DNA from: Oopsacas minuta
Lineage: Eukaryota; Animalia; Porifera
Direction of reading: 5' to 3'
Length of the DNA: 64,000 bases
NCBI GenBank assembly: GCA_024704765.1
Contig: JAKMXF010000044.1
Location: 372,001 to 436,000, forward strand
The notes beneath the pieces were generated by a model. The model had not been told where the DNA came from, made no database searches, and was given only the letters and a program-made list of their open reading frames with translations. The translations under genes and the position numbers were made by a program. The stretch's first letter is position 1, and each line of letters begins with the position of its first letter. Below, piece by piece: positions 42,946-60,891 of the stretch.

Positions 42946-45267
42946 ATGATGTACTCAGCCAACCAGCCATTATCAAACAGTTCTAAAATAAAGGAGAACG
43001 CAGAAATTTCTCACTATCGTATAGCCTCTCTGCAGTATTCATGCCTAGAAAGTATGGAGAATATTCTCAACGCGATTGCCTCGATCTCTGACCTAAAACA
43101 CAGCCAAATGACATTACAATACTATTTATTCGAAGTAAATAGATCAGCTGTTAAAGATTCTACCCGCATACCATCTTCCTACTCTAACATCCTGATGAAT
43201 TATCTCCTAGCGAGTAGGAAAACTAGTGAGAACCTAATCAAGTTGATTACTATGCTAGGCAGCTCATTTCTATTAAATACATTAGTAGTTCCTCGTAATT
43301 TTTTCAACCCAACTCTTCTTGAGCCTATTTTTAATCAATTCCAGCTACACACAGTCGATTTCTCTTTCTGCCTATTTGTAGACAACTCTCTAGTCAATGT
43401 CCTTGTACAGTGTATGTTATATCATACTCAGTCTCTGAAGACACTAGTGTTACGCGGTACAATGTTCACTCAAATTAATATACTAAATGCTTTAATATCT
43501 CTGGAGTGTTTGGATATCAGTGAGCTGAATTATTTACAACCAATCCCAGAATGTAGATCAGTACAGGATTATATTAATAAAATATCTCAAACATTTCCTG
43601 CTCTAACAAGACTAAATATCTACAATACCAACCTGTCTTGTCAAAAGGAATGTATGCCTGGGGTTGGATATGAAATTTCTTTACAGGCATACTTTAGAAC
43701 ACAACTTGTACAGTTGGATTTATCCTGCTCACAATCACAAAACACGCCTCCTTGGATAACAGGACAAGTTATGAGGTTTATGGCGAACCTCTCATCCATA
43801 TCCTCTCTTAAATATTTGGATGTTTCTTTTTGGCCAATTAAAATAGAACATTTGAAGTGTTTCCAGGAAGCTAACAAGGTGTTGGAATTCCTTGGCCTTT
43901 TAGGTACACAAGTAGTTAGCAGTAGTCCTATATTGAGTGCTATAACGAATGAAGTTACTTGTACATTTGATGAGAATTCCATTATCAATAGCATCCACCA
44001 GTACGGATATCGTAGAGATTACATTCATTATATTGTCAATTGTCTAATTGAAGATATGGATAGAGATGGTCACCAGTTTCAACAACCTTTTGAATTGACT
44101 AATACTCTGTTAGATATTATAGAAGCTAATTATCTCTACAAGAAGATTTCTTTCCCTCTTCAAATTCATATGCCTACTTTTGTAGACATTACTTACATCA
44201 TTAGTCGTATCCTTGACAAAGTTTGCTTAGAACATTTCTCTATAAAATTACTGAAAAGAATTGTATTCATATTCATTGAATTGCTTAAGATATCTACGGT
44301 GAATATCTCTTCTAATTGTGAACTTCTCCTGAATATATTTACAGTGTTTGTCAACTTTAATGTTTCAGAGTATATCTCATTTCTAGAGACGTTTGTTTCA
44401 GAATTATTCATCGTCGTGTTTGAGCTACTGACTAATTATTCTACCAAGATGAACTCTATTATTCCTGATGAAGATAACCTATTAGAAATATCTACTTTAG
44501 TATTATCAAACTTGAGCTGGAAAGATTTTAGGAAAATTAACCAAGAACAGATGATTCAGTTTTCACTTATTATATTAGAAGCAATATCTAACTCTCTATC
44601 AAGCTCGAGCCAAGCTAATCCTATTCTCGGATATCTGACTGTAATATTAGCGAATATATCCTGTTACAGAATTGAGGCTTGTAGATGTCTAGTAAGTGAT
44701 CAGCTGTTTTCGATTCTCACTAGAGCTCAGGATTACAACCTTAAGATTGTAATTGAGAATATTTATAGATGCTCTGAGCATGTTATGGAGAGTTTCCTCA
44801 AGTCTAATGGAGAATTTTATTCCAGGGGAGATATTCACAAATTTGTTGAGCATGCATTTTGTAGTTTATCTACTGAAGTGCTAGATGAAGATACGACATA
44901 TTCTCTTTCTGCTATTATTATCTACTACTGGTATACTGTAGAGAAGAATCAACTATCTTCTCCAATTGTAGAGAAAGAAGCTACCCTCAATCTTGTTAGG
45001 GCAAAACTTTCTGAGATCAGTGAGTATGTGAGAGTGAATATTGACACTTTTAGTCTCGAAGCACCTCTCGTTTGTTTGAATAGCAAAAATTCAAATATTC
45101 AATATTTCGCGTTATGTGCAATCCATGGATATCTGAAAAGTGATTTCGACACAATTAAGAAAATTTTCAGGGAAAGTCAATATTATCAACTCGTGTTTAG
45201 TCTCCAATCATCTGATGAAGTTGAAATTAGGGAAAAAGTACATTCAATTGCTACTCTCGTTTTGTAA
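42946..45267 (+). CDS. ZER1/ZYG11-like LRR + armadillo-type protein, divergent, intronless, 773 aa
   Basis: LRRs LKTLVLRG, LECLDISEL, LTRLNIYNT, LVQLDLS, LKYLDVS, LEFLGLLGT, followed by a helical repeat region. This architecture is typical of ZER1/ZYG11 CRL2 receptors. Confidence 0.7.
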   Translation: MMYSANQPLSNSSKIKENAEISHYRIASLQYSCLESMENILNAIASISDLKHSQMTLQYYLFEVNRSAVKDSTRIPSSYSNILMNYLLASRKTSENLIKLITMLGSSFLLNTLVVPRNFFNPTLLEPIFNQFQLHTVDFSFCLFVDNSLVNVLVQCMLYHTQSLKTLVLRGTMFTQINILNALISLECLDISELNYLQPIPECRSVQDYINKISQTFPALTRLNIYNTNLSCQKECMPGVGYEISLQAYFRTQLVQLDLSCSQSQNTPPWITGQVMRFMANLSSISSLKYLDVSFWPIKIEHLKCFQEANKVLEFLGLLGTQVVSSSPILSAITNEVTCTFDENSIINSIHQYGYRRDYIHYIVNCLIEDMDRDGHQFQQPFELTNTLLDIIEANYLYKKISFPLQIHMPTFVDITYIISRILDKVCLEHFSIKLLKRIVFIFIELLKISTVNISSNCELLLNIFTVFVNFNVSEYISFLETFVSELFIVVFELLTNYSTKMNSIIPDEDNLLEISTLVLSNLSWKDFRKINQEQMIQFSLIILEAISNSLSSSSQANPILGYLTVILANISCYRIEACRCLVSDQLFSILTRAQDYNLKIVIENIYRCSEHVMESFLKSNGEFYSRGDIHKFVEHAFCSLSTEVLDEDTTYSLSAIIIYYWYTVEKNQLSSPIVEKEATLNLVRAKLSEISEYVRVNIDTFSLEAPLVCLNSKNSNIQYFALCAIHGYLKSDFDTIKKIFRESQYYQLVFSLQSSDEVEIREKVHSIATLVL

Positions 45268-46519
45268 GAAGTTAATTGCCTTTTTTATTATTATTTTGTA
45301 TTATATTACATGTTCAAGCTTTTAATTATTATCATTATGATGTTACTATTCTCAGTTTACTTACGTACGTATATTACTCTTTAGTAGCTATCGGGAATAA
45401 CTTAATACGTAATAAATTTTCTGAATCATATTGACAATCATCATTGATTTCTATGTCAATTTAACTAAGTTAGAAGGTACCTTTTTCTCCTTCTCGAGGG
45501 TTATTTTCGAGTGTACTTTTAAAGGGCCAAGAGGGAAATTGACTTTCATTATTAAGCTTTGTAAGTACTAAGTTGTATTTAAGTTAACAAATCGATTTTA
45601 AACAAGAAAAGGTCTGAGTGCAACAAACATGCTACTGTTCGATCTCTGGCAACTCTGAAACGTGGCCTCTTTGGAAAATCTATTTATTCTAGTATATCAA
45701 ATTATTTGTCATATTCTCATCAAATTTCTAGCTTAATTTTTGCATAAAACTCTGTCAAAAGATTTGGATGTCTCGCATAGTTAACTACGAGTATCTCCAT
45801 GTATCACCAGTGCAATACTGATTTAATGTCCCTTGAATCTGACTGATTAAACATCACTTATATTGTATTATGGTCGTAGGAGACGATTCGTTTGGCCAGG
45901 CTTCAAATGGACCACCATTTGGACAGCTAATAGAATTAGTATTACTGTAATAGTCAACCGGTGTCACAGCGAATACTCTTCCCCCATATTCACTAAGGGA
46001 ATAGTGTTCGGTGGGGGGAACATTATCCTCTAGGGGAATTGTGTTCCACATTATACACGAGGGAATCCATTTTTTAGGAACTAGTAAAAGGGTATATCCG
46101 CATGCGGAATCTATGAGATATTAAATAAGTATATCCACATGCGGAACTTGTGCAAATTTAACCCTCTCCAACATAAAAAGTTTGTAAATAAAGATCCAGA
46201 TACCCTTCCGATGGAATTGTGTTTAACTATTACAAAAATCTTTTTCTAAAATCAAAATTTGTGAATACATACTCGTATTCCGCATGCGGATTTACAATTT
46301 TAAAACCTCAACTTTGAACTACATGGAGTACAATATTCTCTAGATAATGTTTGGGGACATTATTCACTGTGGCACCGGACCACTTTGGTAGCTCCATATA
46401 TTTTGTATTGTTTAAATTTACATAGTTTGTTTTTATATGACATAATCACTCTAGACCCTAATATTGTTTGTAGATAATACAACACGAATTAACTGTATTT
46501 AGCCAAAATTTATCAAACA

Positions 46520-46681
46520 CAGTGGAACCTGCATAATCCGACACTTGTCTCTCTAGGATATGAAAATAGTGTTGGATTATTTTGTATTATCAGAGTTATT
46601 TTAGATCAGAAACACTGTCAGATTACAGCAGTCTTAAGATAGGACCAGATAATACAGGTATCGGATTATGCAGGCTCACTG
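46520..46681. mobile_element. CAGT-terminus MITE
   Basis: CAGTGGAACCTGCATAATCCGAC ... TCGGATTATGCAGGCTCACTG; a related fragment lies near 27283-27380 in NBAS intron 2. Confidence 0.7.
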
Positions 46682-46782
46682 CTTATAGTTTTCTAATAAT
46701 TAATGGCTATTTACTTATGTTACGTGATTGTTCTCTATATTGCACAATAATTTCCTACTAAATCTAGTGAATTATGTAATAA

Positions 46783-47196
46783 TATTACTATTACTATTAA
46801 TATTACTATTACTATTACTATTACTATTACTATTAATATTACTATTACTATTAATATTACTATTACTATTACTATTACTATTACTATTACTATTACTATT
46901 ACTATTACTATTACTATTACTATTACTATTACTATTACTATTACTATTACTATTACTATTACTATTACTATTACTATTACTATTAATATTACTATTACTA
47001 TTACTATTACTATTACTATTACTATTACTATTACTATTAATATTACTATTACTATTACTATTACTATTACTATTAATATTAATATTACTATTAATATTAC
47101 TATTACTATTAATATTACTATTACTATTACTATTACTATTACTATTACTATTACTATTAATATTACTATTACTATTAATATTACTATTACTATTAC
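46783..47196. repeat. Hexanucleotide microsatellite (TATTAC)n, 69 units
   Basis: 414 bp in perfect 6-bp phase: 58 TATTAC and 11 TATTAA units by my count. Confidence 0.98.
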
Positions 47197-48527
47197 TGTA
47201 CAGTTTTCAGGGATAATTACACAGAATTTAAATATTTATTGCATAATTATTCTCACCTTATTATCAGTTATTATTATTGTGCAATCGTATAAATCAAAAT
47301 ACCAACTTGTATAACAATGAACATTTGATTACTGATTACACTAATTTCCATATTTGTACACTTGCAACATAAAAATGCATGATATTACGTAGTGTTAAGG
47401 GTATATGTTACGGAACATGTTGACATCTTACTGCGGTAGATGTCTCAAATATTTGTCATTCCAGAGCCATTGTGGTGTCTAGCGCAGGGTTTCTCAAAGT
47501 ATTTTGTTCTTTTTCGAAACTAATTTAATCCTTGGCTCACTTTAATTTCACTCAATACAATTAATTTTTCAAAGCTAATTCAATACAAAAATTGACGTAG
47601 TACACTATAAGCTAATCTAACTCTCAAAGACAGCTCTAATATTATATTATTTATTTAATACATTCATCCCGGAGAGAGACACTTGTGTACAGATTTCTGT
47701 ATACTATGTAAAGATTAAGATTAAGATCCATCTATTGAATTTACAAGTATTATAGTTTCTTTAAAGTTACAATTTGGACTAAGAGAATGATCCACGCAGA
47801 CAAAAATATTCAAGCATATTGTTGTTACTATGTCAAGTGTTTGTGTATGAATTCTATGAATTCATCATCCAAATAAGTGTACTTTTAACTAATATCAAGA
47901 ACTCATTTTCGTAACGTGTAACTCATTCAAAAATTAGTTGTTGAAAATTCACAATGAATTGATACAGTTTGGCTCATGATTGTAAATACGTAGGATTGCT
48001 TCTCAGTCCAGTTTACGTCTCTTATATATTATTTATTCCTAAACTCTAATTAATACATTCTGAATTCAAATGGATTATTTATTGATATTCGGGGATACAT
48101 TCATTGAACACAAATGGACTGATCTCGTCCAGATAACACACGCATCGTCTCTCAACCGTGAAACTACCCTCGTAAACACAGAAAGGATTTATCTTTACTG
48201 ACAAATAAATCATCGGAAGTATTAATTGCCCTGGCCTTCCCGAAACTGACCTGTAAGCCAATTTTGAGAGTTTGTCCCTGGAATTGGATGAAGTATATGT
48301 GAAGCTCGGAAACCTTGCTTGAAGGCAGCATACAAAATCCCGTTAGACAAACCCTTTTAATTAATAGAATCAATAGTACAAATGAATTTGAACTTTCCTG
48401 GAAAATTGAGTAGATCTCGAATCTTCTTAATTTGGACGTAGGGATTAATTAAAACTTGAGGCTTCCTTGAATTTTCTCTTAAAAAATATTCGCATAATTT
48501 CACTAAACAAAGAAAATAATTGTACTA

Positions 48528-48628
48528 CAGTCAACATCCGCTATCTCGAATACCCGCTAACTCGAACATTCGTTATTTCGAACAGAATTTTATTTCCTTT
48601 GAGGGTTCAAGATAACGGATGTTGACTG
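48528..48628. mobile_element. Short TA-flanked MITE, 101 bp
   Basis: TA|CAGTCAACATCCGCTATCTCGAA ... TTCAAGATAACGGATGTTGACTG|TA. Confidence 0.85.
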
Positions 48629-49267
48629 TATATGTGTACGAGAAGAGAAATTCAATATATTATCACAAGTTAAAGATTCTACTGGTATGCAGTTCATCGA
48701 GTTAAAGGGAGCTGTAACCTTAGACTGATTTCTAAGAATTCACACAGAAATCTGTACACCAATGTCGTACTTCCATTCATCCAGCTTTGGTTTGCTGATA
48801 TATTATTTCCAAGTTTGCAACCGAATAGTTCAATATTTGGCTGGCTCCTGAATATCAGTATTCAGTATTCGGTTGACCATATATATTTCATACGCCAACC
48901 CTCACGGGACCCCCTGGATTATCCCTGATTTACAATAAATCCATAGAAATATTCAAAAATCCACGGAAATATCATACGATAAGGGATTCGTAAGAATGAC
49001 ATTTGATCTAATATATTTGGCCACCCGAATATTTGGTTATTCTACTATTGGTCAAACAACTATTCGGTTGGAGCGGTTTCAACCTGGATTATTCTCAGAA
49101 GAATTTTCTTATTCGATAACTAATATTTGATTGATCTGATAGAAAACAATTTTACATTCAAGACTCCAAATTATCAATCATTTTTCCCCAAATGCTCTGA
49201 TTTTGAAACAGTTCGTCTCTTTGTTGTGGCTTATCAAATGTACTCTGTGGCCGTGTGTATACTTACA

Positions 49268-49315
49268 CACTGAATTTATCTCATGTGTACACGTACACAT
49301 GAGATAAATTCAGTG
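49268..49315. repeat. Perfect 23-bp inverted repeat with 2-nt spacer
   Basis: CACTGAATTTATCTCATGTGTAC-AC-GTACACATGAGATAAATTCAGTG. Confidence 0.95.
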
Positions 49316-50231
49316 GATACGCGTACACATAAAATTCTTTCATGCACTACTGCAACATATTTACCATATGATATTGAGAATCGGGCTCAAATTACTTCAT
49401 AGGGGATAAGCTACATCAAACTTACTAAGTTACACTAGGGGGACACTCTACTTCGGGACAGTTCATTAATTAGTTTTCTCATACCAATTGGTGTTCTCAC
49501 TTTATAATATTTGATTTTAATATCTACTTCGGTAGATGTCATCATGTTCCGGGGTAGATGTCAACATGTTCCGTAGCATTTATAATGAGCTCTTAACAAA
49601 ATATATTCAAATTTGTAAATTATGAATCCACATATCCGGGTCAGGTTTACTTCAAGGTTACGTATATTTGAACATTTCACAATGTTTAGTTACAGCGTGT
49701 CATATTTTATGTTAGAGAGTGCTAGCTATGAATGAAGCTGAAGTATATGATGTCATGATAATTGGAGGACATTTCGTCAAAAAACGTCCCAACTTTTGAC
49801 GAAGTATCACTCTGAGCTAATTACCTCTTTGAGGCTAAGTTTCAGACTTCAGAGCCTCAACTAGATTTGGGCTCCTTCAGGCGGTAACAGGATCATATGA
49901 CACTTGTGCCTCCCTACCCTGATAGAACTCTGTCCACATATTTTAAAGCCACACGACATGACATCACTAAAGACTAGTCAGGAGGTAATAGGACATATAG
50001 AAAAACTAGAGTATTATCCTGTATGTATTAGTGTATTTCCTAATTTAATAGCTAAGTTCATGTAACTACAGTTGAAAATTGTGAGTGCAGCTGCTATAGG
50101 GAGATATCATAATGTCATGGACGATGTGCGACGTCCTTCCGTGCGGCCGTGCGAAATATAGTGGTCCGATATGCTAAATTGAAAATTGGTACACATATAC
50201 ATATTTGCTCAGGGGGTATCAATTTAATATA

Positions 50232-50367
50232 CAGTAGAACTCGGATAAGACGTACCCCCTCGGGAAACAGAAATTAGTACGTCTTATCCGAATATGTTTG
50301 CATTACAAATAATGATGACTGATATTTTGGGATATAAGAAATAGTACGTCTTATCCGAGTTCTACTG
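50232..50367. mobile_element. Family A MITE, best-preserved copy
   Basis: TA|CAGTAGAACTCGGATAAGACGTAC ... GTACGTCTTATCCGAGTTCTACTG|TA; perfect 24-bp TIRs. Confidence 0.92.
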
Positions 50368-50624
50368 TATGTGATATTTTCACATATTTCTTGTAGAATT
50401 CAAAGGAATGCTAGAAATTAGATTTTAATATTCTCCATGTTGTCAGGTGTATTTGGGTATATAGAGCCCGATTTTTGAGATTTTAAGAATCTGTAACTTA
50501 CAAACTCTAGAGATATCATACTTGTATGATTAATCATATTTTAACATACTTTTTCCAGAATTCCTACTTATTATATTTTCCATCTATTTCCATAGCTTGA
50601 TTAAAATTACACGTTAAACTTGTT

Positions 50625-52171
50625 CTGCCTATTGATTGGCTGTATTATATTCTGCCAATTATAATTGGTTTTGGTATATTTTTGTATTTCGAATTTGAAT
50701 ACATAATAACATACCACAGATGGTAGTTTGTATGTTTCTTTCTTCTTCCTCTATCATTCCTCTATGAAGGCTATTTCTACCTACGAAACCTTGTTGTAAT
50801 GCACATGCATAGCGCCCCAACACAGCACGCGAAGAGGGTTACAGAAGTGCAAAATTGTGTGAAGAAATGGCAAAAAGAGGGAAATGGTCGTAAGATGTGC
50901 ACTGCGCGTCCTTCCTTCCTCTCCATGACTTTAAGGTATGGTGCATACAAGGACACTAATTGGAAAGTGCCAATTAATTTGCATGATATTCTGGAGATAA
51001 ATGTAAGAGATGAAACCATTAAAGCAGAACCCTTAGTGACGATGGGTCAGATTCTGCTAGTTTAATCCCCAAAGGTTGAACCTTGGCTAGTGTACCAGAA
51101 CTTGACGACTTGACAGTCGGGGGCCTAATCATGGGTGTAGGCGTGGAATCTTCTTCACACATATACGGACTGTTCCAACACATTTGTGTGTCTTTCGATA
51201 TTATAACCTCAGATGGTGATTTAGTGCATTGTAGCAAAACAGAGCACCAAGATCTATTCCATGCTATCCCATGGTCTCACGGTAGTATCGGATTTCTAGT
51301 AGCAGCTGAGCTAAAGATTATTCCTTCTAAGCCTTTTGTTAAGTTAAATTATTTTCCTTTTGAAAGTAAAAAAGTCATTTATTGAAAGTTTTACTAAAGA
51401 ATCAAACGATGATAAAAATGATTTTGTTGAAGGAATTTTATTAACAAAATGTTCTGGAGTGGTGATGCTGGTACTTATTCCGACGCACCTAAAGCTGCAA
51501 GCGCGATTAACCGCATTGGACAATTTTGGAAGCCTTGGTTCTACAAATATTTGGAGACGATACAATCTACAGGCTCTTGTACTGAGTATATTCCTCTGAG
51601 AGATTATTATCACAGACACACAAGCGGGATGTTCTGGGAGATGGAAGAGATCATACCATTCGGTAATCATCCTGTCTTCCGTTTTGCCTGTGGTTGGTTA
51701 ATGCCACCCAAAGCGTCCTTACTAAAGTTAACGCAAGGAAAGACAATAAAACGACTCTATGAAGAGAAACATGTGATTCAGGACATGTTCATGCCAGTTG
51801 ATACTCTCTCTGAAATTTTGGAGGTTTTTGAAGAGCAATTTAAAGTTTACCCTCTCTGGTTGTGTCCGTTCAAACTTCCACAAAATCCAGGTCTAGTCCA
51901 CCCCAAGCAAGATAAGACTATGATGTATGTAGATGTAGGAGCTTACAGTGTGCCTAAAGTTGAAAACTTCCAAGCGAAAAAGGCTTTGAAATGTGTCGAA
52001 CATTTCGTGTGTAAGAAGGATGGGTTTCAAATGCTGTATGCAGATAATACATTAACTCGTGAGGAGTTTGGTGAGATGTTTGATCGTGAGCTTTATGATA
52101 ATGTTAGGGAGAGATATGGATGTGTGAATGCATTTCCTGATGTCTATGATAAGGTAGGAAGACATGCATAG
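50625..52171 (+). pseudogene. DHCR24: Delta(24)-sterol reductase pseudogene (full-length homology, disrupted 5' half)
   Basis: The reconstructed reading follows DHCR24 end to end (HRW*FVCFFLLPLS, MCTARP, EPLVTMGQ, PELDDLTVGGLIMG, YGLFQHIC, AIPWSHGSIGFL, KPWFYK, PLRDYYHRH, YPLWLCPF, FQMLYAD, AFPDVYDK). Lesions: no ATG, TAG 50724-26, -1 near 51053, TGA 51077-79 at a conserved Trp, +1 in A-run 51368-73, -1 near 51470. Confidence 0.9.
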
Positions 52172-52628
52172 AAGTGATTGCAATAATTTGAATCAAAGCT
52201 CTCTATGTTTATGTACATGTATACGTATATTTGATTATCCCCCTTTCTTAATTCGTTATTCGTATATTTTGCTAGATCGTATTTTTTGTATATTTTTGGT
52301 TGATAATGTTTTCTTGAAATAATATGTATTTATGCTAAATTCATTCGCTATACTCTTCCTTTCAGTTTGAATTACACTTTGAATAGTATACAAACATATA
52401 ATATACGTGTGTTTTGTAGTGGTCATGAATTCAATGGAACTTCTTTAATACGATCACCAACGGATGGTTTGTTCGCTTTATCAGGAGTTCGTATTAACCT
52501 GAGTAATACCAATTGAACAAATATTCAGGGATCTGATTTTGTGTGAATATTTGTTCGTCTTTCCTGAAATTCGTATTATCGAGGTTACACTTTCTTTATA
52601 CTATTGGATAGTCACATTAGCTTATAAA

Positions 52629-53306
52629 ATGGCTACAAATACTCCAACTAGTCCTGATGACGTAGCATCTGAGTTAGATACAGTTACTCTACTAGAGAGC
52701 ACTGTAGAACAAGAGATGGATGTGTTAGATACTCCTATCAATATTAAAAACAAGAAACAAGCTGTTGATTTCCGCAGAATCCCTGTACCCCCGAATCGAT
52801 TCACTCCCCTCAAGAACAACTGGATGAAAATATTCACACCTTGTGTTCAACATATGCAGCTACACATTAGAATAAATTTACGTAATAAATGTGTAGAACT
52901 CAAAACTTCAAAGGAAACGACAGACCCGGGCGCCATTCAGAAAGCAGCTGATTTTGTCAAAGCATTTATGCTAGGTTTTGAAGTTGATGACGCAATAGCT
53001 CTACTAAGATTAGATGAATTGTTTATTGAATCATTTGAGATACAGGACGTTAAACCGTTGAAAGGAGACCATCTCTCCCGAGCTATTGGAAGGATCGCTG
53101 GGAGGGGTGGTAAGACTAAATTCACTATTGAGAATATAACAAAGACTAGAGTCGTCCTAGCTGAAAGTAAGATACATATTCTAGGTGCATACCAGAATAT
53201 TAGGGTGGCAAGAACCGCGATTTGTAATCTTATCCTCGGCAGTCCTCCTTCTAAGGTGTATGGTTCTCTGAAGATTATTGCTAGCAGAATACAAGCTCAA
53301 CTCTAA
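52629..53306 (+). CDS. PNO1: RNA-binding protein PNO1/Dim2 (KH domains, 40S biogenesis), intronless
   Basis: [65 protein letters not shown] at 52629. Confidence 0.97.
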
Positions 53307-53429
53307 TAGAATATTTACCAGTTCTATAGTATCATTTGAATATAGTGTATTGTATTAGAACGATAAATTCATTTATTTTAATGTTTATAATTTGTAATTG
53401 TATTTATTCGTAGAATTTAGTTAATTGAA

Positions 53430-54461
53430 ATGGCGATGGAAGAACCAAACTCTTCCACCTTCAACATAGAGTTGTTAGAAGATCCTCAGGACTCTATCGA
53501 TCCCTCCCTTATATCTGAAAATTGTAGCCTATTCTACGAGAGAGCGGAACAAGGCTACATATGTAAGGTATGTGATCACCAATACGCATCACGAAGATAC
53601 GTACTATTCCACCTAACCAACTCTCATAACATACCTACACACTCCTGGCCTACTTGTGATAAATGTGGTAAGATATTCACGAAACCTTCAAAACTAGCAG
53701 TTCATATTAATAACCATCCTAAGATGAAACTTGAAAAAGATTCTGACATAATTGATAATTTTCAGGTAATCTATCCTTGTAAAACTACTGACATTAAAGT
53801 AATAAAATCGCCACCTACAGCTACAGAGCATCATCCTAAGAGCACCAAGCACAGGACACCAAAACCTAAGCTTTTGACAGTTTATTTCATCAGATCATCT
53901 CTCCCGGAAACTTACAAGTCTAATCCTCATAAGTGTGGTAAATGCTTCAAATCTTTCCTTACACTACAAGATAGAGATATTCATAGAGAATTGATACACA
54001 CGGAAATATCCTCTCTCACTCCTCAGAGCAAAGCTGTTACCAGAAAGACAAAACGTAATTTGAAAAGGATGAAACTAAACAAATTAAAGAACAAACAAAC
54101 ACACAGATCTAGCAAACCAGTAAGCAATGCTACATCATCAAAAAACTCTACGTTTTCTGATGCTAATGATCCAGGTCCCTCTCAGAGAAAGAAAATAGGG
54201 AGACCACTCGGTTCTATGAGCAGAAAGTATTCATATTCTCATCCTGACAGTCTAAATGAATCTGCACGGCTAGGAGATACAGATAATGATTCTAATCTCA
54301 TCACCTTTATTAGGAGAGAAAATTCAACATCTCCTATAGATTCTGAGTTAATGAACATGTCAAGTTTCCTGATTCCTAAAGAAGAGATAGAAGATGGAAA
54401 ATACTCTCCTCCTCGCGAATTTAATATTCTAATGAATGACCCTTCTACTAATATTATGTAG
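53430..54461 (+). CDS. C2H2 zinc-finger protein (3 fingers) with AT-hook-like motif
   Basis: CKVC..HLTNSH, CDKC..HINNH and CGKC..HRELIH fingers; basic stretch and RKKIGRPLGS. Confidence 0.85.
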   Translation: MAMEEPNSSTFNIELLEDPQDSIDPSLISENCSLFYERAEQGYICKVCDHQYASRRYVLFHLTNSHNIPTHSWPTCDKCGKIFTKPSKLAVHINNHPKMKLEKDSDIIDNFQVIYPCKTTDIKVIKSPPTATEHHPKSTKHRTPKPKLLTVYFIRSSLPETYKSNPHKCGKCFKSFLTLQDRDIHRELIHTEISSLTPQSKAVTRKTKRNLKRMKLNKLKNKQTHRSSKPVSNATSSKNSTFSDANDPGPSQRKKIGRPLGSMSRKYSYSHPDSLNESARLGDTDNDSNLITFIRRENSTSPIDSELMNMSSFLIPKEEIEDGKYSPPREFNILMNDPSTNIM

Positions 54462-56335
54462 ACACAGTCTCTTAAATGATTTGTTTCAATCCTTTTGAGT
54501 TTTGTATTTTTCGTTGATTAATTGTATAAAACTCGAATAATTACAATATCACATAATTAATATTACATGGACATTACATCAATATTTTCAGTTTACTATA
54601 TACAAAGATTTTAAGGAGGTTTTAATTGCGAGGGAGAATCTTTGAGTTTTCTTTTTTGGATAATGTATTTTACTCAAGGTTCACAATTTCGCAGATTCAT
54701 CATAATTCATATGATTAATCATATTTTTTTGCATATTATTCAAAATGATGCTAAATTTTTTTAAATACTGTTTGTCACGAGTAATCAAGCATGTGGATAC
54801 TGATTTTGACATTTTCAAATCTCTCACTCAGTGATTAATCATATGATTAATCATATTTTCACACCGTTTTACACCTTTTCAATTTGATGCTAGAGATTTC
54901 GGTTCATTAAGTTAGACAGGGGTAATTGCAGGAGGATAATTATTCGGAATCCTATCCATAGGATTTGCGGATAAACCAGTACAGTAGGGGACTAATAATT
55001 ATTGAATATACTAAAATATTTCTCAAATCCAGGAACCCAAAATAATACGGGGTATGGTGCATGAGGTATCTACACTACGGGGTTAGGGAGCACGCCCCCC
55101 TGGAAAGAACAAAAACAAATACCCTGAGCTGCACTACCAGTTTGTCGGCTGGACACTTTTTGGTTATCTAACACAAGGTTTCCCAATTAGTAGGTCGCAG
55201 TGCCACTTGTCATTGATAACAAAGTTTGAAGCGCCAATATCCCTTACAACAACACAAATTATATTATGTATAATCATAATTGAGGTTAGTGAACTATTCC
55301 GCACCAATTCCGATTCTAAGATCTGCCCGAAATCCGCGCGCATTCATTTGATAAACCCTGCTTTCAAGGATTCTTAGGTATCCTGAGTGTAAATTAATTA
55401 GAGAAATCTATTAATTGGGAATGATGCAGATGGCCAGTGCAACTTGAAAATGTATAATTGGACAGCTAGCTTATTCAAATCGAATCATAGAATTTCATAC
55501 TTAAACAGCATCACCTGGATAATGGAGCACCATCATCGGCTGACACATTTTGTGTATCCTTGTCGATTTCGCTCAATTGGCATATTGTCATAACTACAAC
55601 CGTGAACTATGTAGTTCACTCTACAACTTATGCCTAGCAGGGTAACAGGGGCGGTCTTAGTATTTTACATGGTAGCTAATTCTATTCTTATGGCCTAGAA
55701 AGAGCAATATATCTAAGATTAACTACGATACAAAGTGGCTCTAGAACGTTGTATAATTAATTATGTTGCATCAAATGTAACGAATTACATCACGGCCAAA
55801 ATACGGGCAAAAAGAAGACTAAAAAATGACACGTAGCCGTAAGAAGGATTTCTTCCAAAAGAAAGACATCTAATCATCCTTTAACCTTATACCATAACAT
55901 AGTCAATAACTGTATAGGGTTCATAGAAAGCCATTTTAACTTGGTTATAACTATGGATACATGACATTTAGAGAAAAATCATAATGAGAAAAATATAAAT
56001 ATTCCCACACAATAAAAATAATTGGTCATCTGATACCAAAATCAAATTGCCAATCTCCTTAACTAGATCAAAAGATTTATCGCTAAATTTGTGAATTTCT
56101 CCCGAAATTCATGCGCATTGTCTTGGTTAGGTTACTCTGCTCTTCATTGAGAATTTCGAGGTAATGAGCTATCGCTGTATTCTCCACCAGTGCAAGGAAT
56201 AAACTCACTGGCCATATCGTGTAATCTGATATAAAGAAATAGGCACCATTTATCATACTAATCTATATTAGAAGATTGCTATGCTATAATTATGCTTATA
56301 AGGAAAACTTATTCGTTATTTATATTTGATTGATA

Positions 56336-58180
56336 ATGTCTCTAGTTCGAAAAGTAATTCTTGCTATTTCCATCTCATTGCTCATTTTGACTATTCAAAC
56401 AGAACGGGTCTGTCCTCCTAACTTTTCTACTGAATATCAATCTCTCTGCTCTATTCCTTCTGTTTGTGACTGTGACTATTATCGTGGTTGCAGAGAATGC
56501 TGTTCCTACATTCCAATATCAAACTTGTGTAACTACACATCATCTAACTATTTCTCTATCGATAGCAGTAGCACAGTATTGAGCTGTGACACAGGCTACT
56601 CTCTACTCTACGTAGATTCTCTCTCTTTCTTTAGAAAGTGTTCTGAATACTGTGAATGTGATGCAAACACTAACAATTGTGAATATTGCTGTAAGGTAAC
56701 AGAGCTCTCTTGTTATAGAAGAGAGTCAGTAGTTGTAAATACTACCATTAGTTTCACTGATATCAAATCTATCGCATCATTAGCCACTCTCCCAACTAAC
56801 TATACTGCTACTCTTCGCAATCCGATTATTGATCAGGGAGCATGTGGATCCAGCCACGCCATATCAGCTGCTAGCGTATTCTCAGAGAGATTGAGTAGAT
56901 TCTACGGTACGATGGTATCTGTATCTCCTCAGAACTTTCTATGCCAAGGAACTTCTATCTTTAATTCCACGATTAACCTGTATCCAGGCTGTTCGGGTGG
57001 TATTGCATACGATGTACTCAGTTCTCTGAGTGAGTATCCAGGTCACTTGACTTGTACTGGAGGTTGTAGGACAGGATGTCTACCTTATGATGGGTACTAC
57101 GGGGGAGTGATTGATGTCAGTTCTGCTAGCCAGTGTAGAGTTGGATTCACAAAAGATGAGTCAGTTGTTACAGAAATAAGATGTCTAACTGCTTGCAATT
57201 GTAGTACACAAGCTAATTGTGATTGTTGTAAGCGAGAAGACAACTTCTGTTTAGCAGATGTATTTAACTACTCTACTGCTTGTGATGCTCTCCCCCCTGA
57301 CACGCCATACCGTACTTCTTGTACTGACACCTGTACCGCAGGATGTTCCAACCCCGCCTTCTCTTCACAGGAGAGATATCGAGCTAGAAATGTAACAACT
57401 TGTTTGATATATAACGGAAATTGGCCAGCTATGCCCAATGCTGATTTAGAGAGTGTAGTTATGTGTAATCTCTTCACTGAGGGTGTTATGACTGTAACAA
57501 TGCTAGTGAATGACACATTCCTTACTTTCTTTCAGGACAACCCTGACAGAATATTCAACAGCTCGTCTCCCCAGGGTCTGTCTATCGGGGTACAGACATT
57601 CGTGTTGATAGGCTGGGGAGTAGGGAGTGGTAGTCCTGGGATAAAGTTCTGGAGATTGGCCACCAACTGGGGGACTAAATTCGGGTTAGATGGGGTTATT
57701 TTGGTAGAACGAGGCATCAATTTACTCAATATAGAGAGTGAGATCTGTATGATTGGAGCTGCAGCAGATCTCCCCAACCCTCAGCAACAGGTCAGCGGAG
57801 AATCCCCGGGCATTCCCTTCCTCTCCAGTCAGAGAGATCTGCCTGAAACAAACCAATGGTTTTCTCTCCAGACAGACGATACAGACTTGCAAGCTGCCAT
57901 GTCAAAGCTATATGGCAGTAACATAACAGTTGCTAATGACGTCACTGTCCTAATTTCTCAAGGACAACTAGCTTCTGGACTGTTAATATATGCTAACTTT
58001 AGTGTTGGGAATTTTAGTTATGAAGGGTTGGTGTTACGTCCAGCTTACGACAGCAGTGAGTATGTGATTATTAATAATGTACCTCCAATAGATCGTCTTC
58101 TCAGTTCTTCTCCACTCATCCTGGGTAACGCTCTCCTGCTTGCTATCTTGCTTGTTTTTCTACCCATAATATTGTTTTAG
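56336..58180 (+). CDS. Secreted, membrane-anchored, Cys-rich cathepsin-B/TINAG-like papain-fold protein, predicted inactive, 614 aa
   Basis: Signal peptide; IIDQGACGSSHAIS, SPQNFLC, GCSGG, FVLIGWG, FWRLATNWG, FGLDG, NLLNIES match the peptidase C1A framework; hydrophobic C-terminus. Confidence 0.85.
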   Translation: MSLVRKVILAISISLLILTIQTERVCPPNFSTEYQSLCSIPSVCDCDYYRGCRECCSYIPISNLCNYTSSNYFSIDSSSTVLSCDTGYSLLYVDSLSFFRKCSEYCECDANTNNCEYCCKVTELSCYRRESVVVNTTISFTDIKSIASLATLPTNYTATLRNPIIDQGACGSSHAISAASVFSERLSRFYGTMVSVSPQNFLCQGTSIFNSTINLYPGCSGGIAYDVLSSLSEYPGHLTCTGGCRTGCLPYDGYYGGVIDVSSASQCRVGFTKDESVVTEIRCLTACNCSTQANCDCCKREDNFCLADVFNYSTACDALPPDTPYRTSCTDTCTAGCSNPAFSSQERYRARNVTTCLIYNGNWPAMPNADLESVVMCNLFTEGVMTVTMLVNDTFLTFFQDNPDRIFNSSSPQGLSIGVQTFVLIGWGVGSGSPGIKFWRLATNWGTKFGLDGVILVERGINLLNIESEICMIGAAADLPNPQQQVSGESPGIPFLSSQRDLPETNQWFSLQTDDTDLQAAMSKLYGSNITVANDVTVLISQGQLASGLLIYANFSVGNFSYEGLVLRPAYDSSEYVIINNVPPIDRLLSSSPLILGNALLLAILLVFLPIILF

Positions 58181-60036
58181 ATACTTTTGTACTTACCAAT
58201 AGCTGCTTCATTTATACTATAGTAATTCAGTGTGTTAAGTATTTTACAGGTGTTTCTTTATTTACATTTAATTAATGAGTTCCGGTTACTTGTGAAACAA
58301 ATGGTGGAATTTCATTTATAACCAAGCAAAGAAATGATCCACGCACGGCATGATTAATTCAGATTATAACAACATAGTCTACACTTGATCAACTTAAAGG
58401 CTGCAATTACAACTGGTGCATGCAACAATGTTGCGATGTGCATAGCCATGTTGAATTTCCATGCAACTTTGTTGAAATATGCAGGCAACTTCAGATGATA
58501 CAAGCCGCTTAGCCAAACCTTGTGTAACGCTACAAGGGGGAGTGTAGTAAGCAGAGTAGCAACCGGCATACCCATTCTTAAAATTATCTAATACAGGCAA
58601 ACCTCCGAGATACGGAAATCATCAGAGGTTACCCTTATACACTCTTAATATACTATTTTAAGGCCGAAATATCAGATGTTAGCAATAATAAGTACTACCA
58701 ATATTTATTGAAAACCGAGTAACCGAGGAGCAAGTTTTGGCCTAGAGATTCCAAGTGTCTCCAGTCTGTAATCTATAATAGATATAATATAGATATAGAT
58801 TCTATATATGGACCTAAGATTTAAATAGATAAAATGAAGGATATTTTGGCCATCCAGTCTTCAGACGAACTCCTCTAGTTTCTTTGTATCTGCTCCTCCA
58901 ATATGACACGGGCTCCGCCCCCAAATTCCTAAATGGAGCCGCCAACTAAGGCTCAGCTCCTCAGAATTGGCGAGCTCACCTAGCCCTAGCGCCGCTCTTT
59001 GGTGCGCGTATATTTAACGTTGTGGCTACACTTCTGGCCAGAAGGATAAATATATGGGTGCCGTTACCAGCATACAAGATTATCCTCTAAAAATACCATA
59101 AACCACGTCCACTTTAAGAAACAAAACTTTGGGTGCATTGCCAGCACTGTAACCACTTCTCTCTTATTGAAATAGATATACAATCAACAAATAAAAATAC
59201 AAACATATATGCATATATTCCCTATATTTGAATTGCTTCTATAATTTGTTCTTGTCGGATCAATGGTGTGTAAATCATCAATTATTTCTAGTCATTACTG
59301 CTAATTACAAAGCCACCATTTGTATTAAACTGCTTCCATCACCCTTAACATTCCAGATTGAAACGTTGTTTCTATGATTTTGATAGAATTTAATTCCAGA
59401 GATGTATTTCCTGTCGAATACTGTGTGAATTGAACTAAAAACCACAATTCAATATTCAACAAGAATCTCAGTAGCAGCTGCTCTATTCTGAGATTGTTAG
59501 TTGCACAACAGAAATACAATTTACATCATTTCTTGATTAGAGAGATTATATGCTTTCAGAGAATCTTGTTTCAACTTGGTTTTCTATAAGAAGGGTTGTT
59601 TCTCGTATCGAGCATTTCCCCTCATATTTTTCTCTCTTTCAATATTGTTTCAAGAATTGCTCTGATTATTATAATTGCTATTATACAGGTTGCTTGAGAG
59701 AATTGTCTTATCGATGTACAGAGACCCTTTCTAGATTGGGCTCAGCTTTTTCGTTGTCAAATTTAGAAATATTTATCTTCAATATTCAGATATTGCAGTT
59801 CACCCCTGGGACTATTTCCAGACTTTAGGTGAGTAATTTTATAATATATTGCAATTACGTTTGCATAAATTTTATGAATCTCTTATATTCTTTGATAATT
59901 TGGGGAATATGATTCATATTAATTAATCATAAGTAATCTTCTCTTCTTTGAGTTCTGCAATTCATTCAGTATTTGATAGTTCTATCATCAAATACTTTTA
60001 TATATCAGTTTGATTTCAATTCTGTATTCGTATCCG

Positions 60037-60891
60037 ATGGAGTCTGACTTAGTTTGTAACTTTGCTAAATGTCGTCAAACGCTTGGGAGCTTCGGCTGGA
60101 TCACCTCATGTTCCCACGTGTTCTGTGACGAACACGGTAACCATGAATTCAACAGATCAGCGAACAAGCGGTGTCCGGCTTGTAAAAGCGATATGAACGG
60201 CAAGTTCAATATTGTCCGAGCAGACCTACACCCAAGCGAGGAGTATAAGTCAATGGCACTAGCTGGACAGAGACCTGAGGTAGTGATGGAGATCTGTAGT
60301 CGTGCTATCGCTCTCTGGATGTATCAGTCTACTCAAGAGAAATTGTATCACGAATATTCTGCTAGACAAGCTAAGGAGAAAGCTTGTGATCTGGAGCAGT
60401 ATTATGAGAAGCAAATTGTGGATACAAAGACCGAACTAAATGTTATCCAAATGCAACTAAATGGTTTGAGGAAAGATAACGAAGAGTTGAAGAAGAATTT
60501 CAATTTAGTTTCAGATAAATTACAGGAGCGCACTAGACACTGTCATAAACTGCAATCACAGAACGATTCTCTCAAAAGGCAAGCAATCAAACCGGGTATA
60601 TTCATTGAAGATGACGTCACCCCTCCATCACAAGCTGCGATGACTGGACAACCTTCTGACTTTCACTTTGTGTTCGATCACTCAGCTGATTCCCACCCAA
60701 TTCAACAACAATTTGATATGCAACCATTCCGACCCATCTCTCCCCATCATCCTTTATCTACCCTACATAGCAATACATTAGCTCCTCATGACGCTAATCT
60801 GGAGAATGTGCCTCGGGTCATTATGCCGTTTGGAACCCCACCTCTTGATGGCGAGATTACCAAGAAATTGGGACGGAGGAAACTCAACTAG
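60037..60891 (+). CDS. CCNB1IP1: E3 ligase CCNB1IP1/HEI10 (meiotic crossover RING protein), intronless
   Basis: LVCNFAKCR..L...WITSCSHVFCDEHG RING, CPAC, LHPSEEYKSMALAGQRPE, SRAIALWMYQ, then coiled coil. ATG at 60037. Confidence 0.95.
   Translation: MESDLVCNFAKCRQTLGSFGWITSCSHVFCDEHGNHEFNRSANKRCPACKSDMNGKFNIVRADLHPSEEYKSMALAGQRPEVVMEICSRAIALWMYQSTQEKLYHEYSARQAKEKACDLEQYYEKQIVDTKTELNVIQMQLNGLRKDNEELKKNFNLVSDKLQERTRHCHKLQSQNDSLKRQAIKPGIFIEDDVTPPSQAAMTGQPSDFHFVFDHSADSHPIQQQFDMQPFRPISPHHPLSTLHSNTLAPHDANLENVPRVIMPFGTPPLDGEITKKLGRRKLN

What the first reader, a model, noticed from the sequence alone, without database searches (positions are those of the whole stretch)
50625..52171. DHCR24 is multiply inactivated: candidate recent loss of sterol side-chain reduction
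Seen: six lesions in the 5' 850 bp. They are a missing ATG (CTG at 50625, 29 nt behind a TTTCCATAG acceptor-like site), TAG at 50724, -1 near 51053, TGG>TGA at 51077, +1 at 51368-73 and -1 near 51470. The last 240 codons are open and well conserved. Established: DHCR24 is the FAD-dependent reductase converting desmosterol to cholesterol, and Delta24 sterols are substrates for C24-methyltransferases in sponges. Inference: recent pseudogenisation implying dietary or symbiont sterol dependence, or diversion to alkylation. The three indels fall in short homopolymers and could be assembly errors. However, the two nonsense substitutions and the clean 4.8-kb NBAS exon nearby favour real decay. It may instead be a dead duplicate.
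Basis: partly seen in the sequence, partly recalled or inferred. Interest (0 to 1): 0.8.

Follow-up and report, generated by a model that had tools for sequence, protein, structure and literature searches.

The report
Dead spare DHCR24 copy in glass sponge
The broken sterol-reductase gene is real, but it is the second of two old DHCR24 copies in the glass sponge Oopsacas minuta; the main copy is intact on another scaffold, so the sponge has not lost sterol side-chain reduction.

Summary
Window 50625-52171 (+) is a single-exon DHCR24 sequence with two premature stops, three frameshifts and no start codon. Contigs from two runs of the source sample, at about 100x depth, match the assembly with zero differences, so these are not assembly errors. 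One correction: comparison with the orthologue puts the lost ATG at 50631-50633 (now ATT), not at the CTG at 50625.

The interpretation does not hold. The genome is Oopsacas minuta (GCA_024704765.1). It carries an intact 516-aa single-exon DHCR24 (P0146) on scaffold JAKMXF010000003.1. That gene sits in a neighbourhood conserved in three other glass-sponge assemblies.

The window copy is an old glass-sponge paralogue, 65-67% identical in protein to the main copy. It lies upstream of PNO1. Two other assemblies have a more decayed copy at the same syntenic place, with different lesions, and two have none.

The O. minuta copy keeps 110 of 115 universally invariant DHCR24 residues. Its own branch is shorter than that of the main copy. 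A relative about 3% diverged reads GTG (Val) where O. minuta has TAG. So the copy was functional until recently.

Verdict: recent death of a dispensable paralogue that glass sponges have lost repeatedly. This is ordinary gene turnover, of modest interest.

The parts
50631..52171 (+). Pseudogene of the second glass-sponge DHCR24 paralogue ('DHCR24b'). It is a single exon, colinear with full-length DHCR24.
   Evidence: It is 67.7% nt identical over 1517 nt to the intact O. minuta gene.
50631..50633 (+). ATT at the ancestral start codon. The ERZ25072730 orthologue has ATG here. There is no other in-frame ATG downstream of the TGA at 50598.
   Evidence: alignment, columns 36-50.
50724..50726 (+). 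Premature TAG in place of GTG (Val).
   Evidence: Organism B reads GTG and organism C reads GTA at this place (table 3).
51052..51053 (+). 1-nt deletion (frameshift). Ancestral CAG ATT TCT is now CAG ATT CT.
   Evidence: alignment column 549.
51077..51079 (+). Premature TGA in place of TGG (Trp).
51368..51373 (+). A6 run carrying a 1-nt insertion (frameshift).
   Evidence: insertion at alignment column 871.
51467..51468 (+). 1-nt deletion (frameshift). Ancestral ATG ACT GGT is now ATG CT GGT.
   Evidence: alignment column 973.
51449..52171 (+). Surviving open 240-codon C-terminal ORF. The native stop is TAG at 52169.
52629..53306 (+). PNO1 gene, used as the synteny anchor downstream of the pseudogene.
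42946..45267 (+). 773-aa ORF with no Pfam hit of its own. Its 3' end (45001-45227) matches the end of the gene upstream of PNO1 in L006, L010 and L012; in L006 and L011 that gene has faint LRR_Zer-1 hits. Used as the upstream synteny anchor.
50221..50378 (.). High-copy MITE-like repeat just upstream of the pseudogene. It is context only, not part of the gene.

Best explanation
Window 50631-52171 is the recently inactivated copy of a second, glass-sponge-specific DHCR24 paralogue ('DHCR24b'). DHCR24 was duplicated before the sampled glass sponges diverged. One copy stayed in the Metallophos-DHCR24-FeADH-RPS18 neighbourhood and is intact in all four assemblies examined, including O. minuta (P0146). 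The other copy settled between an LRR-like gene and PNO1. It diverged quickly at first and was then held under purifying selection for a long time. It has since become dispensable and is being lost lineage by lineage. It is absent from two assemblies. It is heavily decayed in ERZ25072730 and mostly deleted in ERZ25072740. In O. minuta it has been freshly hit by six private lesions. Sterol delta-24 reduction in O. minuta is presumably carried by the intact main copy. The duplication, the synteny, the private lesions, the conservation and the intact paralogue are shown here. That the main copy is enzymatically sufficient, and what DHCR24b once did, are inferred.
For: - Identity: named delta(24)-sterol reductase hits at 55-58% identity, and an FAD_binding_4 domain on the 100-aa piece.
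- Organism and record: O. minuta GCA_024704765.1, scaffold JAKMXF010000044.1.
- Intact paralogue: P0146, 516 aa in one ORF at L002:6001-7551 on JAKMXF010000003.1. It is 65-67% identical to the window pieces.
- Main-copy synteny and single-exon structure are shared by three other assemblies.
- Syntenic decayed copies lie upstream of PNO1: L012:4235-5584, 72% nt identical over 1412 nt, and remnants at L011:5966-6550. L010 and L006-L009 have none.
- Lesions: O. minuta and ERZ25072730 share none. O. minuta has 3 frameshifts and 2 stops in this count, plus the lost start codon. ERZ25072730 has 13 frame-breaking indels and 4 stops.
- Tree: the two decayed copies form a clade (support 100/99) inside or next to the glass-sponge main-copy clade (100/100). 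The stem is 0.33. The O. minuta branch is only 0.13, against 0.22 for its main copy.
- Substitution rates: non-synonymous difference between the two decayed copies (pN 0.135) is no higher than between the two main copies (0.150). Synonymous sites are saturated at about 0.78.
- Conservation: 110 of 115 residues invariant across 20 intact DHCR24s are retained.
- Reads: no differences in X1 or X2. Organism B has GTG at the TAG site, and its contig over 50762-51406 has two gaps of net length zero.
Against: - No expression or enzyme data exist for either copy, so the sufficiency of P0146 is inferred from intactness and conservation only.
- X1 and X2 come from the sample that gave the assembly.
- Organism B's state is printed for only one of the six lesion sites.
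- The position of the decayed-copy clade relative to the four main-copy genes is unresolved (a polytomy; sister with support 94/89). The duplication is therefore dated only as older than the O. minuta / ERZ25072730 split.
- The species behind the ERZ assemblies are unknown to me.
- A small excess of contig depth at 50912-51253 is unexplained.
Confidence: 0.85

Rival explanations
1. One reading: O. minuta has lost DHCR24 activity, in a unitary gene loss. It must therefore take saturated side-chain sterols from diet or symbionts, or it channels delta-24 sterols into alkylation.
For: The window copy is dead. [quoted passage not shown]
Against: An intact, conserved, syntenic 516-aa DHCR24 exists in the same assembly. 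It shows strong purifying selection between species: pN is 0.15 while pS is saturated.
Confidence: 0.04
2. The lesions are sequencing or assembly errors, and the gene is intact in the animal.
For: Two of the three indels sit in short homopolymers (TTT and A6). The assembly used PacBio reads (PMC10280926).
Against: Contigs from two runs at about 100x depth reproduce every lesion with zero differences. The assembly was built and polished with Illumina reads. Two lesions are substitutions to stop codons, one is a start-codon substitution, and one indel is not in a homopolymer.
Confidence: 0.03
3. It is a null allele that still segregates. The dead copy is one haplotype of O. minuta and functional alleles persist in the species. 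On this view organism B, about 3% diverged with Val at the TAG site, is a conspecific or near-conspecific carrier.
For: Organism B reads GTG at 50724-5. Its contig over 50762-51406 has two gaps of net length zero, which fits an unshifted frame. The lesions are few and the sequence is otherwise very well conserved.
Against: In the source sample the pseudogene contig has the same depth as its neighbours and no listed alternative letters, so that sample is homozygous. Organism B carries a different organism label. Six lesions on one haplotype point to some time spent as a dead gene.
Confidence: 0.12
4. It is a retrocopy that was dead on arrival: a processed pseudogene of the main gene that was never functional.
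For: It has no introns.
Against: The parent gene is itself intronless in all four species, so intron absence is uninformative. There is no poly-A tract after the stop. The copy sits at the same syntenic site in at least three species. It shows long purifying selection.
Confidence: 0.01

Closest known systems
Animal DHCR24 (delta(24)-sterol reductase, seladin-1), including O. minuta P0146
   Same: It is colinear over the whole length: N-terminal membrane segment, FAD_binding_4 domain and C-terminal domain. It is 65-67% identical to P0146 and 55-58% identical to echinoderm, mollusc and cnidarian DHCR24. It keeps 110 of 115 invariant residues.
   Different: It has no start codon, two premature stops and three frameshifts. 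It lies at a different locus, upstream of PNO1. It forms its own clade with a long stem.
Plant DWF1-family paralogues (SSR1/DWF1, SSR2 and sterol delta-24 isomerase in Solanaceae; PMC6112714, title and abstract seen)
   Same: It is a precedent for lineage-specific duplication of this enzyme family followed by divergence of the paralogues in sterol side-chain chemistry. Here too a paralogue evolved fast after duplication and was then conserved.
   Different: No functional data exist for the sponge paralogue. Here the extra copy is being lost rather than recruited. The parallel is an analogy, not a test.
Decayed DHCR24b copies in other glass-sponge assemblies (L012:4235-5584 in ERZ25072730; L011:5966-6550 in ERZ25072740)
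   Same: They have the same syntenic position and orientation upstream of PNO1. The ERZ25072730 copy forms a clade with the window copy (100/99).
   Different: They are much more degraded. ERZ25072730 has 13 frame-breaking indels, 4 stops and an inverted C-terminal piece. ERZ25072740 has lost more than 800 nt. Neither shares a lesion with O. minuta.

Membership tests
DHCR24 / delta(24)-sterol reductase family | FAD-binding domain of the FAD_binding_4 (PF01565) type | tested here: met
   PF01565 at E=8.5e-07 (29.2 bits, cut-off 26.4) on the 100-aa piece 51083-51382.
DHCR24 / delta(24)-sterol reductase family | Full-length colinear similarity to named DHCR24 proteins | tested here: met
   Searches give named delta(24)-sterol reductase hits. 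Searches give 65-67% identity to O. minuta DHCR24 across the N-terminal, middle and C-terminal pieces. One search gives a glass-sponge DHCR24 clade with support 100/100.
DHCR24 / delta(24)-sterol reductase family | Uninterrupted reading frame with a start codon (a functional gene) | tested here: not met
   Searches show ATT at the start, 2 premature stops and 3 frameshifts. It is a pseudogene of the family, not a working member.
DHCR24 / delta(24)-sterol reductase family | Reductase activity on delta-24 sterols | not testable with these tools
   This needs an enzyme assay. The broken frame makes activity implausible.
Unitary pseudogene (loss of the only functional copy) | No intact paralogue in the same genome | tested here: not met
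   P0146, 516 aa, intact, on JAKMXF010000003.1.
Processed (retrotransposed) pseudogene | Lacks introns that the parent gene has, and carries a poly-A tail and target-site duplications | tested here: not met
   The parent is intronless in four species. There is no poly-A tract after 52171. The locus is syntenic in other species and shows long purifying selection.
Duplicated-gene pseudogene (non-processed) that was functional before its death | An orthologous copy at the same locus in other species, low non-synonymous divergence, and private lesions | tested here: met

The most novel reading that the evidence does not exclude
Glass sponges ancestrally ran two DHCR24 enzymes with different side-chain jobs. 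One example would be delta-24(25) reduction in cholesterol synthesis versus reduction of delta-24(28) alkylidene sterols taken from the diet or made by methyltransferases, in parallel with the plant SSR1/SSR2 split. The second enzyme is now being discarded independently in several lineages. O. minuta (dead copy) and its about-3%-diverged relative (possibly intact) would then form a natural knockout pair for sterol side-chain chemistry in an early-branching animal.
Probability: 0.2. Interest if true: 0.45.

Novelty: new member of a known kind. Interest (0 to 1): 0.2.

Why it matters
This result stops a false inference from spreading. O. minuta should not be scored as lacking DHCR24 or as a sterol auxotroph on the basis of this locus.

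The positive residue is small but usable. Glass sponges had a second, long-conserved DHCR24 paralogue that no paper in the searched library describes. It is being lost repeatedly. That is relevant to reconstructions of sponge sterol pathways and to how sponge sterol biomarkers are read. A neighbouring lineage may still carry the paralogue intact for functional tests.

Tried and rejected
- A PDB sequence search with the 240-aa ORF found nothing.
- Pfam has no model that hits the C-terminal half.
- The word search with the 240-aa piece cannot see full-length proteins because of its length window. It found nothing closer than 58% identity.
- Alignments A1 and A2, which included the short N-terminal pieces, were misaligned by MAFFT. 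I replaced them with A3, in which the window pieces are separate, trimmed rows beside a 419-aa homologue. That profile found P0146.
- A formal dN/dS estimate was impossible because synonymous sites are saturated (pS 0.75-0.82). I used pN and protein branch lengths instead.
- I tested whether the main paralogue explains the extra contig depth at 50912-51253. It reaches at most 76% identity in any 80-nt window, so this is not convincing.
- Accession searches to name the ERZ, SRR and SAMN samples found no paper.
- The scan's notes hold nothing on SQLE, LSS or CYP51 in this genome, so the rest of the sterol pathway was not assessed.
- I did not run the exhaustive representative search. Its 50% clustering would merge animal DHCR24s, and the question was already answered.
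- No structure prediction was needed.
- The read-through translation, with X at each break, was used only inside scripts for the trees and the conservation count. It was never sent to a search tool.

Full report
**What is in the window.** Translating 50500-52200 in three frames shows one DHCR24-like reading that hops between frames.
- Frame 0 runs from about 50625 to 51053 and is interrupted by TAG at 50724.
- Frame 2 runs from 51053 to 51373 and is interrupted by TGA at 51077.
- Frame 0 resumes from 51375 to 51467.
- Frame 2 then runs from 51470 to the stop at 52169-52171.

The last stretch lies within the 240-codon ORF 51449-52171. The 100-aa middle piece hits Pfam FAD_binding_4. The 240-aa piece finds many proteins that their sources name delta(24)-sterol reductase, at 55-58% identity and E-values down to 1e-89. 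So the sequence is DHCR24-like far beyond chance, and it is contiguous, with no introns.

**Are the lesions real?** The single read-laying run laid Logan contigs of four runs on 50000-53400. Runs X1 and X2 (organism A, one sample) give contigs 50344-51465, 51436-52513 and 50873-52047 with zero other letters and zero gaps. Their depth is about 85-105, the same as neighbouring PNO1. Every lesion is therefore present in the reads and appears homozygous. The caveat is that this sample is very probably the one the assembly came from. The genome paper says Illumina reads were used for assembly and polishing (PMC10280926). Assembly error is thus very unlikely, but this is not an independent animal.

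**Which genome.** The 240-aa ORF is encoded on NCBI GCA_024704765.1, scaffold JAKMXF010000044.1. That accession prefix belongs to the Oopsacas minuta (Hexactinellida) genome paper. The paper does not mention sterols or pseudogenes.

**The decisive result: an intact paralogue.** The word search only sees proteins of 0.55-1.75 times the query length. I therefore built an alignment of a 419-aa homologue with three window pieces as separate rows (A3) and searched with that profile. Among the hits is P0146, 'Delta(24)-sterol reductase [Oopsacas minuta]', 516 aa. It is encoded as one uninterrupted ORF at L002:6001-7551 on a different scaffold, JAKMXF010000003.1. It has the FAD_binding_4 domain. It is 65-67% identical to the window pieces and 67.7% identical at the DNA level.

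**The main-copy locus is conserved.** The three next-closest proteins (P0135, P0189, P0222) come from three ENA assemblies: ERZ20067936, ERZ25072740 and ERZ25072730. All lie in the same neighbourhood as P0146: Metallophos, DHCR24, then Fe-ADH or RPS18 or both. Extended to the first ATG, all are single ORFs of 514-518 aa. DHCR24 is therefore intronless in glass sponges generally. The window copy's lack of introns says nothing about retrotransposition.

**The window copy is an old paralogue with its own locus.** I found glass-sponge PNO1 orthologues and fetched their surroundings. The gene order LRR-like, PNO1, C2H2 zinc finger, papain-like, RING matches the window.
- In ERZ25072730, the interval upstream of PNO1 holds a DHCR24-like sequence at L012:4235-5584. 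It is 72% identical over 1412 nt to window 50631-52038. Its last ~105 nt lie inverted at L012:6704-6600.
- In ERZ25072740, only remnants survive, at L011:5966-6051 and L011:6268-6550.
- ERZ20067936 (L010) and the ERZ26869290 / BUSC20 / SRR11455659 group (L006-L009) have nothing there.

**Lesions are private.** In the DNA alignment with two main-copy genes, scored, O. minuta has exactly three frame-breaking indels (51052, 51366-73, 51467) and two premature stops. In each case the ERZ25072730 decayed copy and the main copies keep the ancestral state: GTG, ATTTCT/ATTCCT, TGG, ATGACTGG. The ERZ25072730 copy has its own 13 frame-breaking indels and four stops at other positions. The ERZ25072740 copy has large deletions.

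The alignment also shows ATG in ERZ25072730 where O. minuta has ATT (50631-50633), followed by the shared D-W-L-Y-Y motif. The lost start codon is therefore most likely there, not at the CTG at 50625. The in-frame TGA at 50598 rules out an upstream coding exon.

**Evolutionary history.** In a protein tree (LG+C20) the window copy falls in a 100/100 clade with the four glass-sponge main-copy genes, as their sister (94/89). I then added the ERZ25072730 decayed copy, read by main-copy codon columns with X at breaks.
- The two decayed copies form a clade (100/99) on a long stem (0.33).
- The O. minuta terminal branch is only 0.13, shorter than that of its own main copy (0.22).
- The ERZ25072730 decayed copy has 0.29.
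- The branching order among the decayed-copy clade and the main-copy genes becomes a polytomy.

Pairwise counts show synonymous sites saturated (pS about 0.78) between O. minuta and ERZ25072730 for both gene pairs. The non-synonymous difference between the two decayed copies (0.135) is no larger than between the two main copies (0.150). The window copy keeps 110 of 115 residues that are invariant in 20 intact DHCR24s from fungi to mammals.

Together these results indicate four things:
- The duplication predates the split of these species.
- The paralogue changed quickly at first and was then held by purifying selection for most of its history.
- The deaths are independent.
- The O. minuta death is recent.

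**How recent.** Run X5 (organism B, another study) lays on the region at about 97% identity. This includes the non-coding upstream stretch, so it is the orthologous locus. It reads G and T at 50724-50725, which makes GTG (Val) instead of TAG. Its contig over 50762-51406 has 22 substitutions and two gaps with net length zero. That is what an unshifted frame across the deletion at 51052 and the insertion at 51368-73 would require. However, the table did not print those sites, and 51407-51658 is not covered. Organism C reads GTA (Val) there.

My inference, which is rough: three indels and three disabling substitutions in 1.5 kb correspond to one or two percent of neutral divergence. That places the death near or after the A/B split. 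Whether B is a separate species or a divergent population of O. minuta is unknown, so a still-segregating null allele cannot be excluded.

**Mechanistic reading.** The shown facts are a dead DHCR24b, an intact DHCR24 main copy and repeated independent loss. The inference is that side-chain delta-24 reduction in O. minuta is done by P0146, and that DHCR24b had become redundant or its substrate irrelevant.

What DHCR24b once did is open.
- DHCR24 is proposed to reduce the 24(28) double bond of fucosterol in animals that make sitosterol (bioRxiv 10.1101/2022.04.22.489198).
- Hexactinellids are said to modify dietary steroids by reductive steps (PMC12541326 citing Blumenberg 2002).
- DWF1-family paralogues have diverged in function in Solanaceae (PMC6112714).

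A substrate split is therefore a reasonable but untested idea.

**Novelty and verdict.** No paper in the searched library treats DHCR24 in glass sponges. The paralogue and its repeated loss appear undescribed, but the phenomenon is ordinary gene turnover. The striking claim, loss of sterol side-chain reduction, is refuted. Interest is low.

**Limits.**
- No RNA data are available.
- The rest of the sterol pathway was not examined (one search found no notes).
- A small excess of contig depth at 50912-51253 is unexplained.
- The exhaustive protein search and structure tools were not used because the question was settled without them.
- The X-joined read-through stayed inside scripts.

Noticed in passing
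window 50221-50378: A MITE-like element of about 158 bp with 35-nt inverted ends that are 91% complementary. Summed contig depth reaches 10^4-10^5 in runs of all three organisms, so it is a very abundant repeat family shared across these glass sponges.
   Followed up: partly
window 52394-52621: A second high-copy repeat directly 5' of the PNO1 start (52629). Depth is 10^3-10^5, and it has an internal 29-nt direct repeat at 52468 and 52550. Many contigs end or branch here.
   Followed up: no
window 46780-47200: A long (ATTACT/ATTAAT)n hexanucleotide array. It produces a spurious 162-aa ORF at 46728-47216.
   Followed up: no
L012:6600-6704 (ERZ25072730): The last ~105 nt of the decayed DHCR24b copy lie inverted about 1 kb downstream of the rest. 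This is a small rearrangement inside a dead gene.
   Followed up: partly
window 42946-60891 versus L006, L010, L011, L012: The gene order LRR-like, (DHCR24b), PNO1, C2H2 zinc finger, papain-like pseudo-protease, RING is conserved across several glass-sponge assemblies, although synonymous sites are saturated. In L006-L008 an NHL-repeat gene occupies the DHCR24b slot.
   Followed up: partly
window 50912-51253: An extra 20-40 units of summed contig depth appear in X1 and X2 (about 3 in X5) above the single spanning contig. No alternative letters are listed. The main paralogue is at most 76% identical here, so the source is unclear.
   Followed up: partly
I did not confirm its identity.
   Followed up: partly
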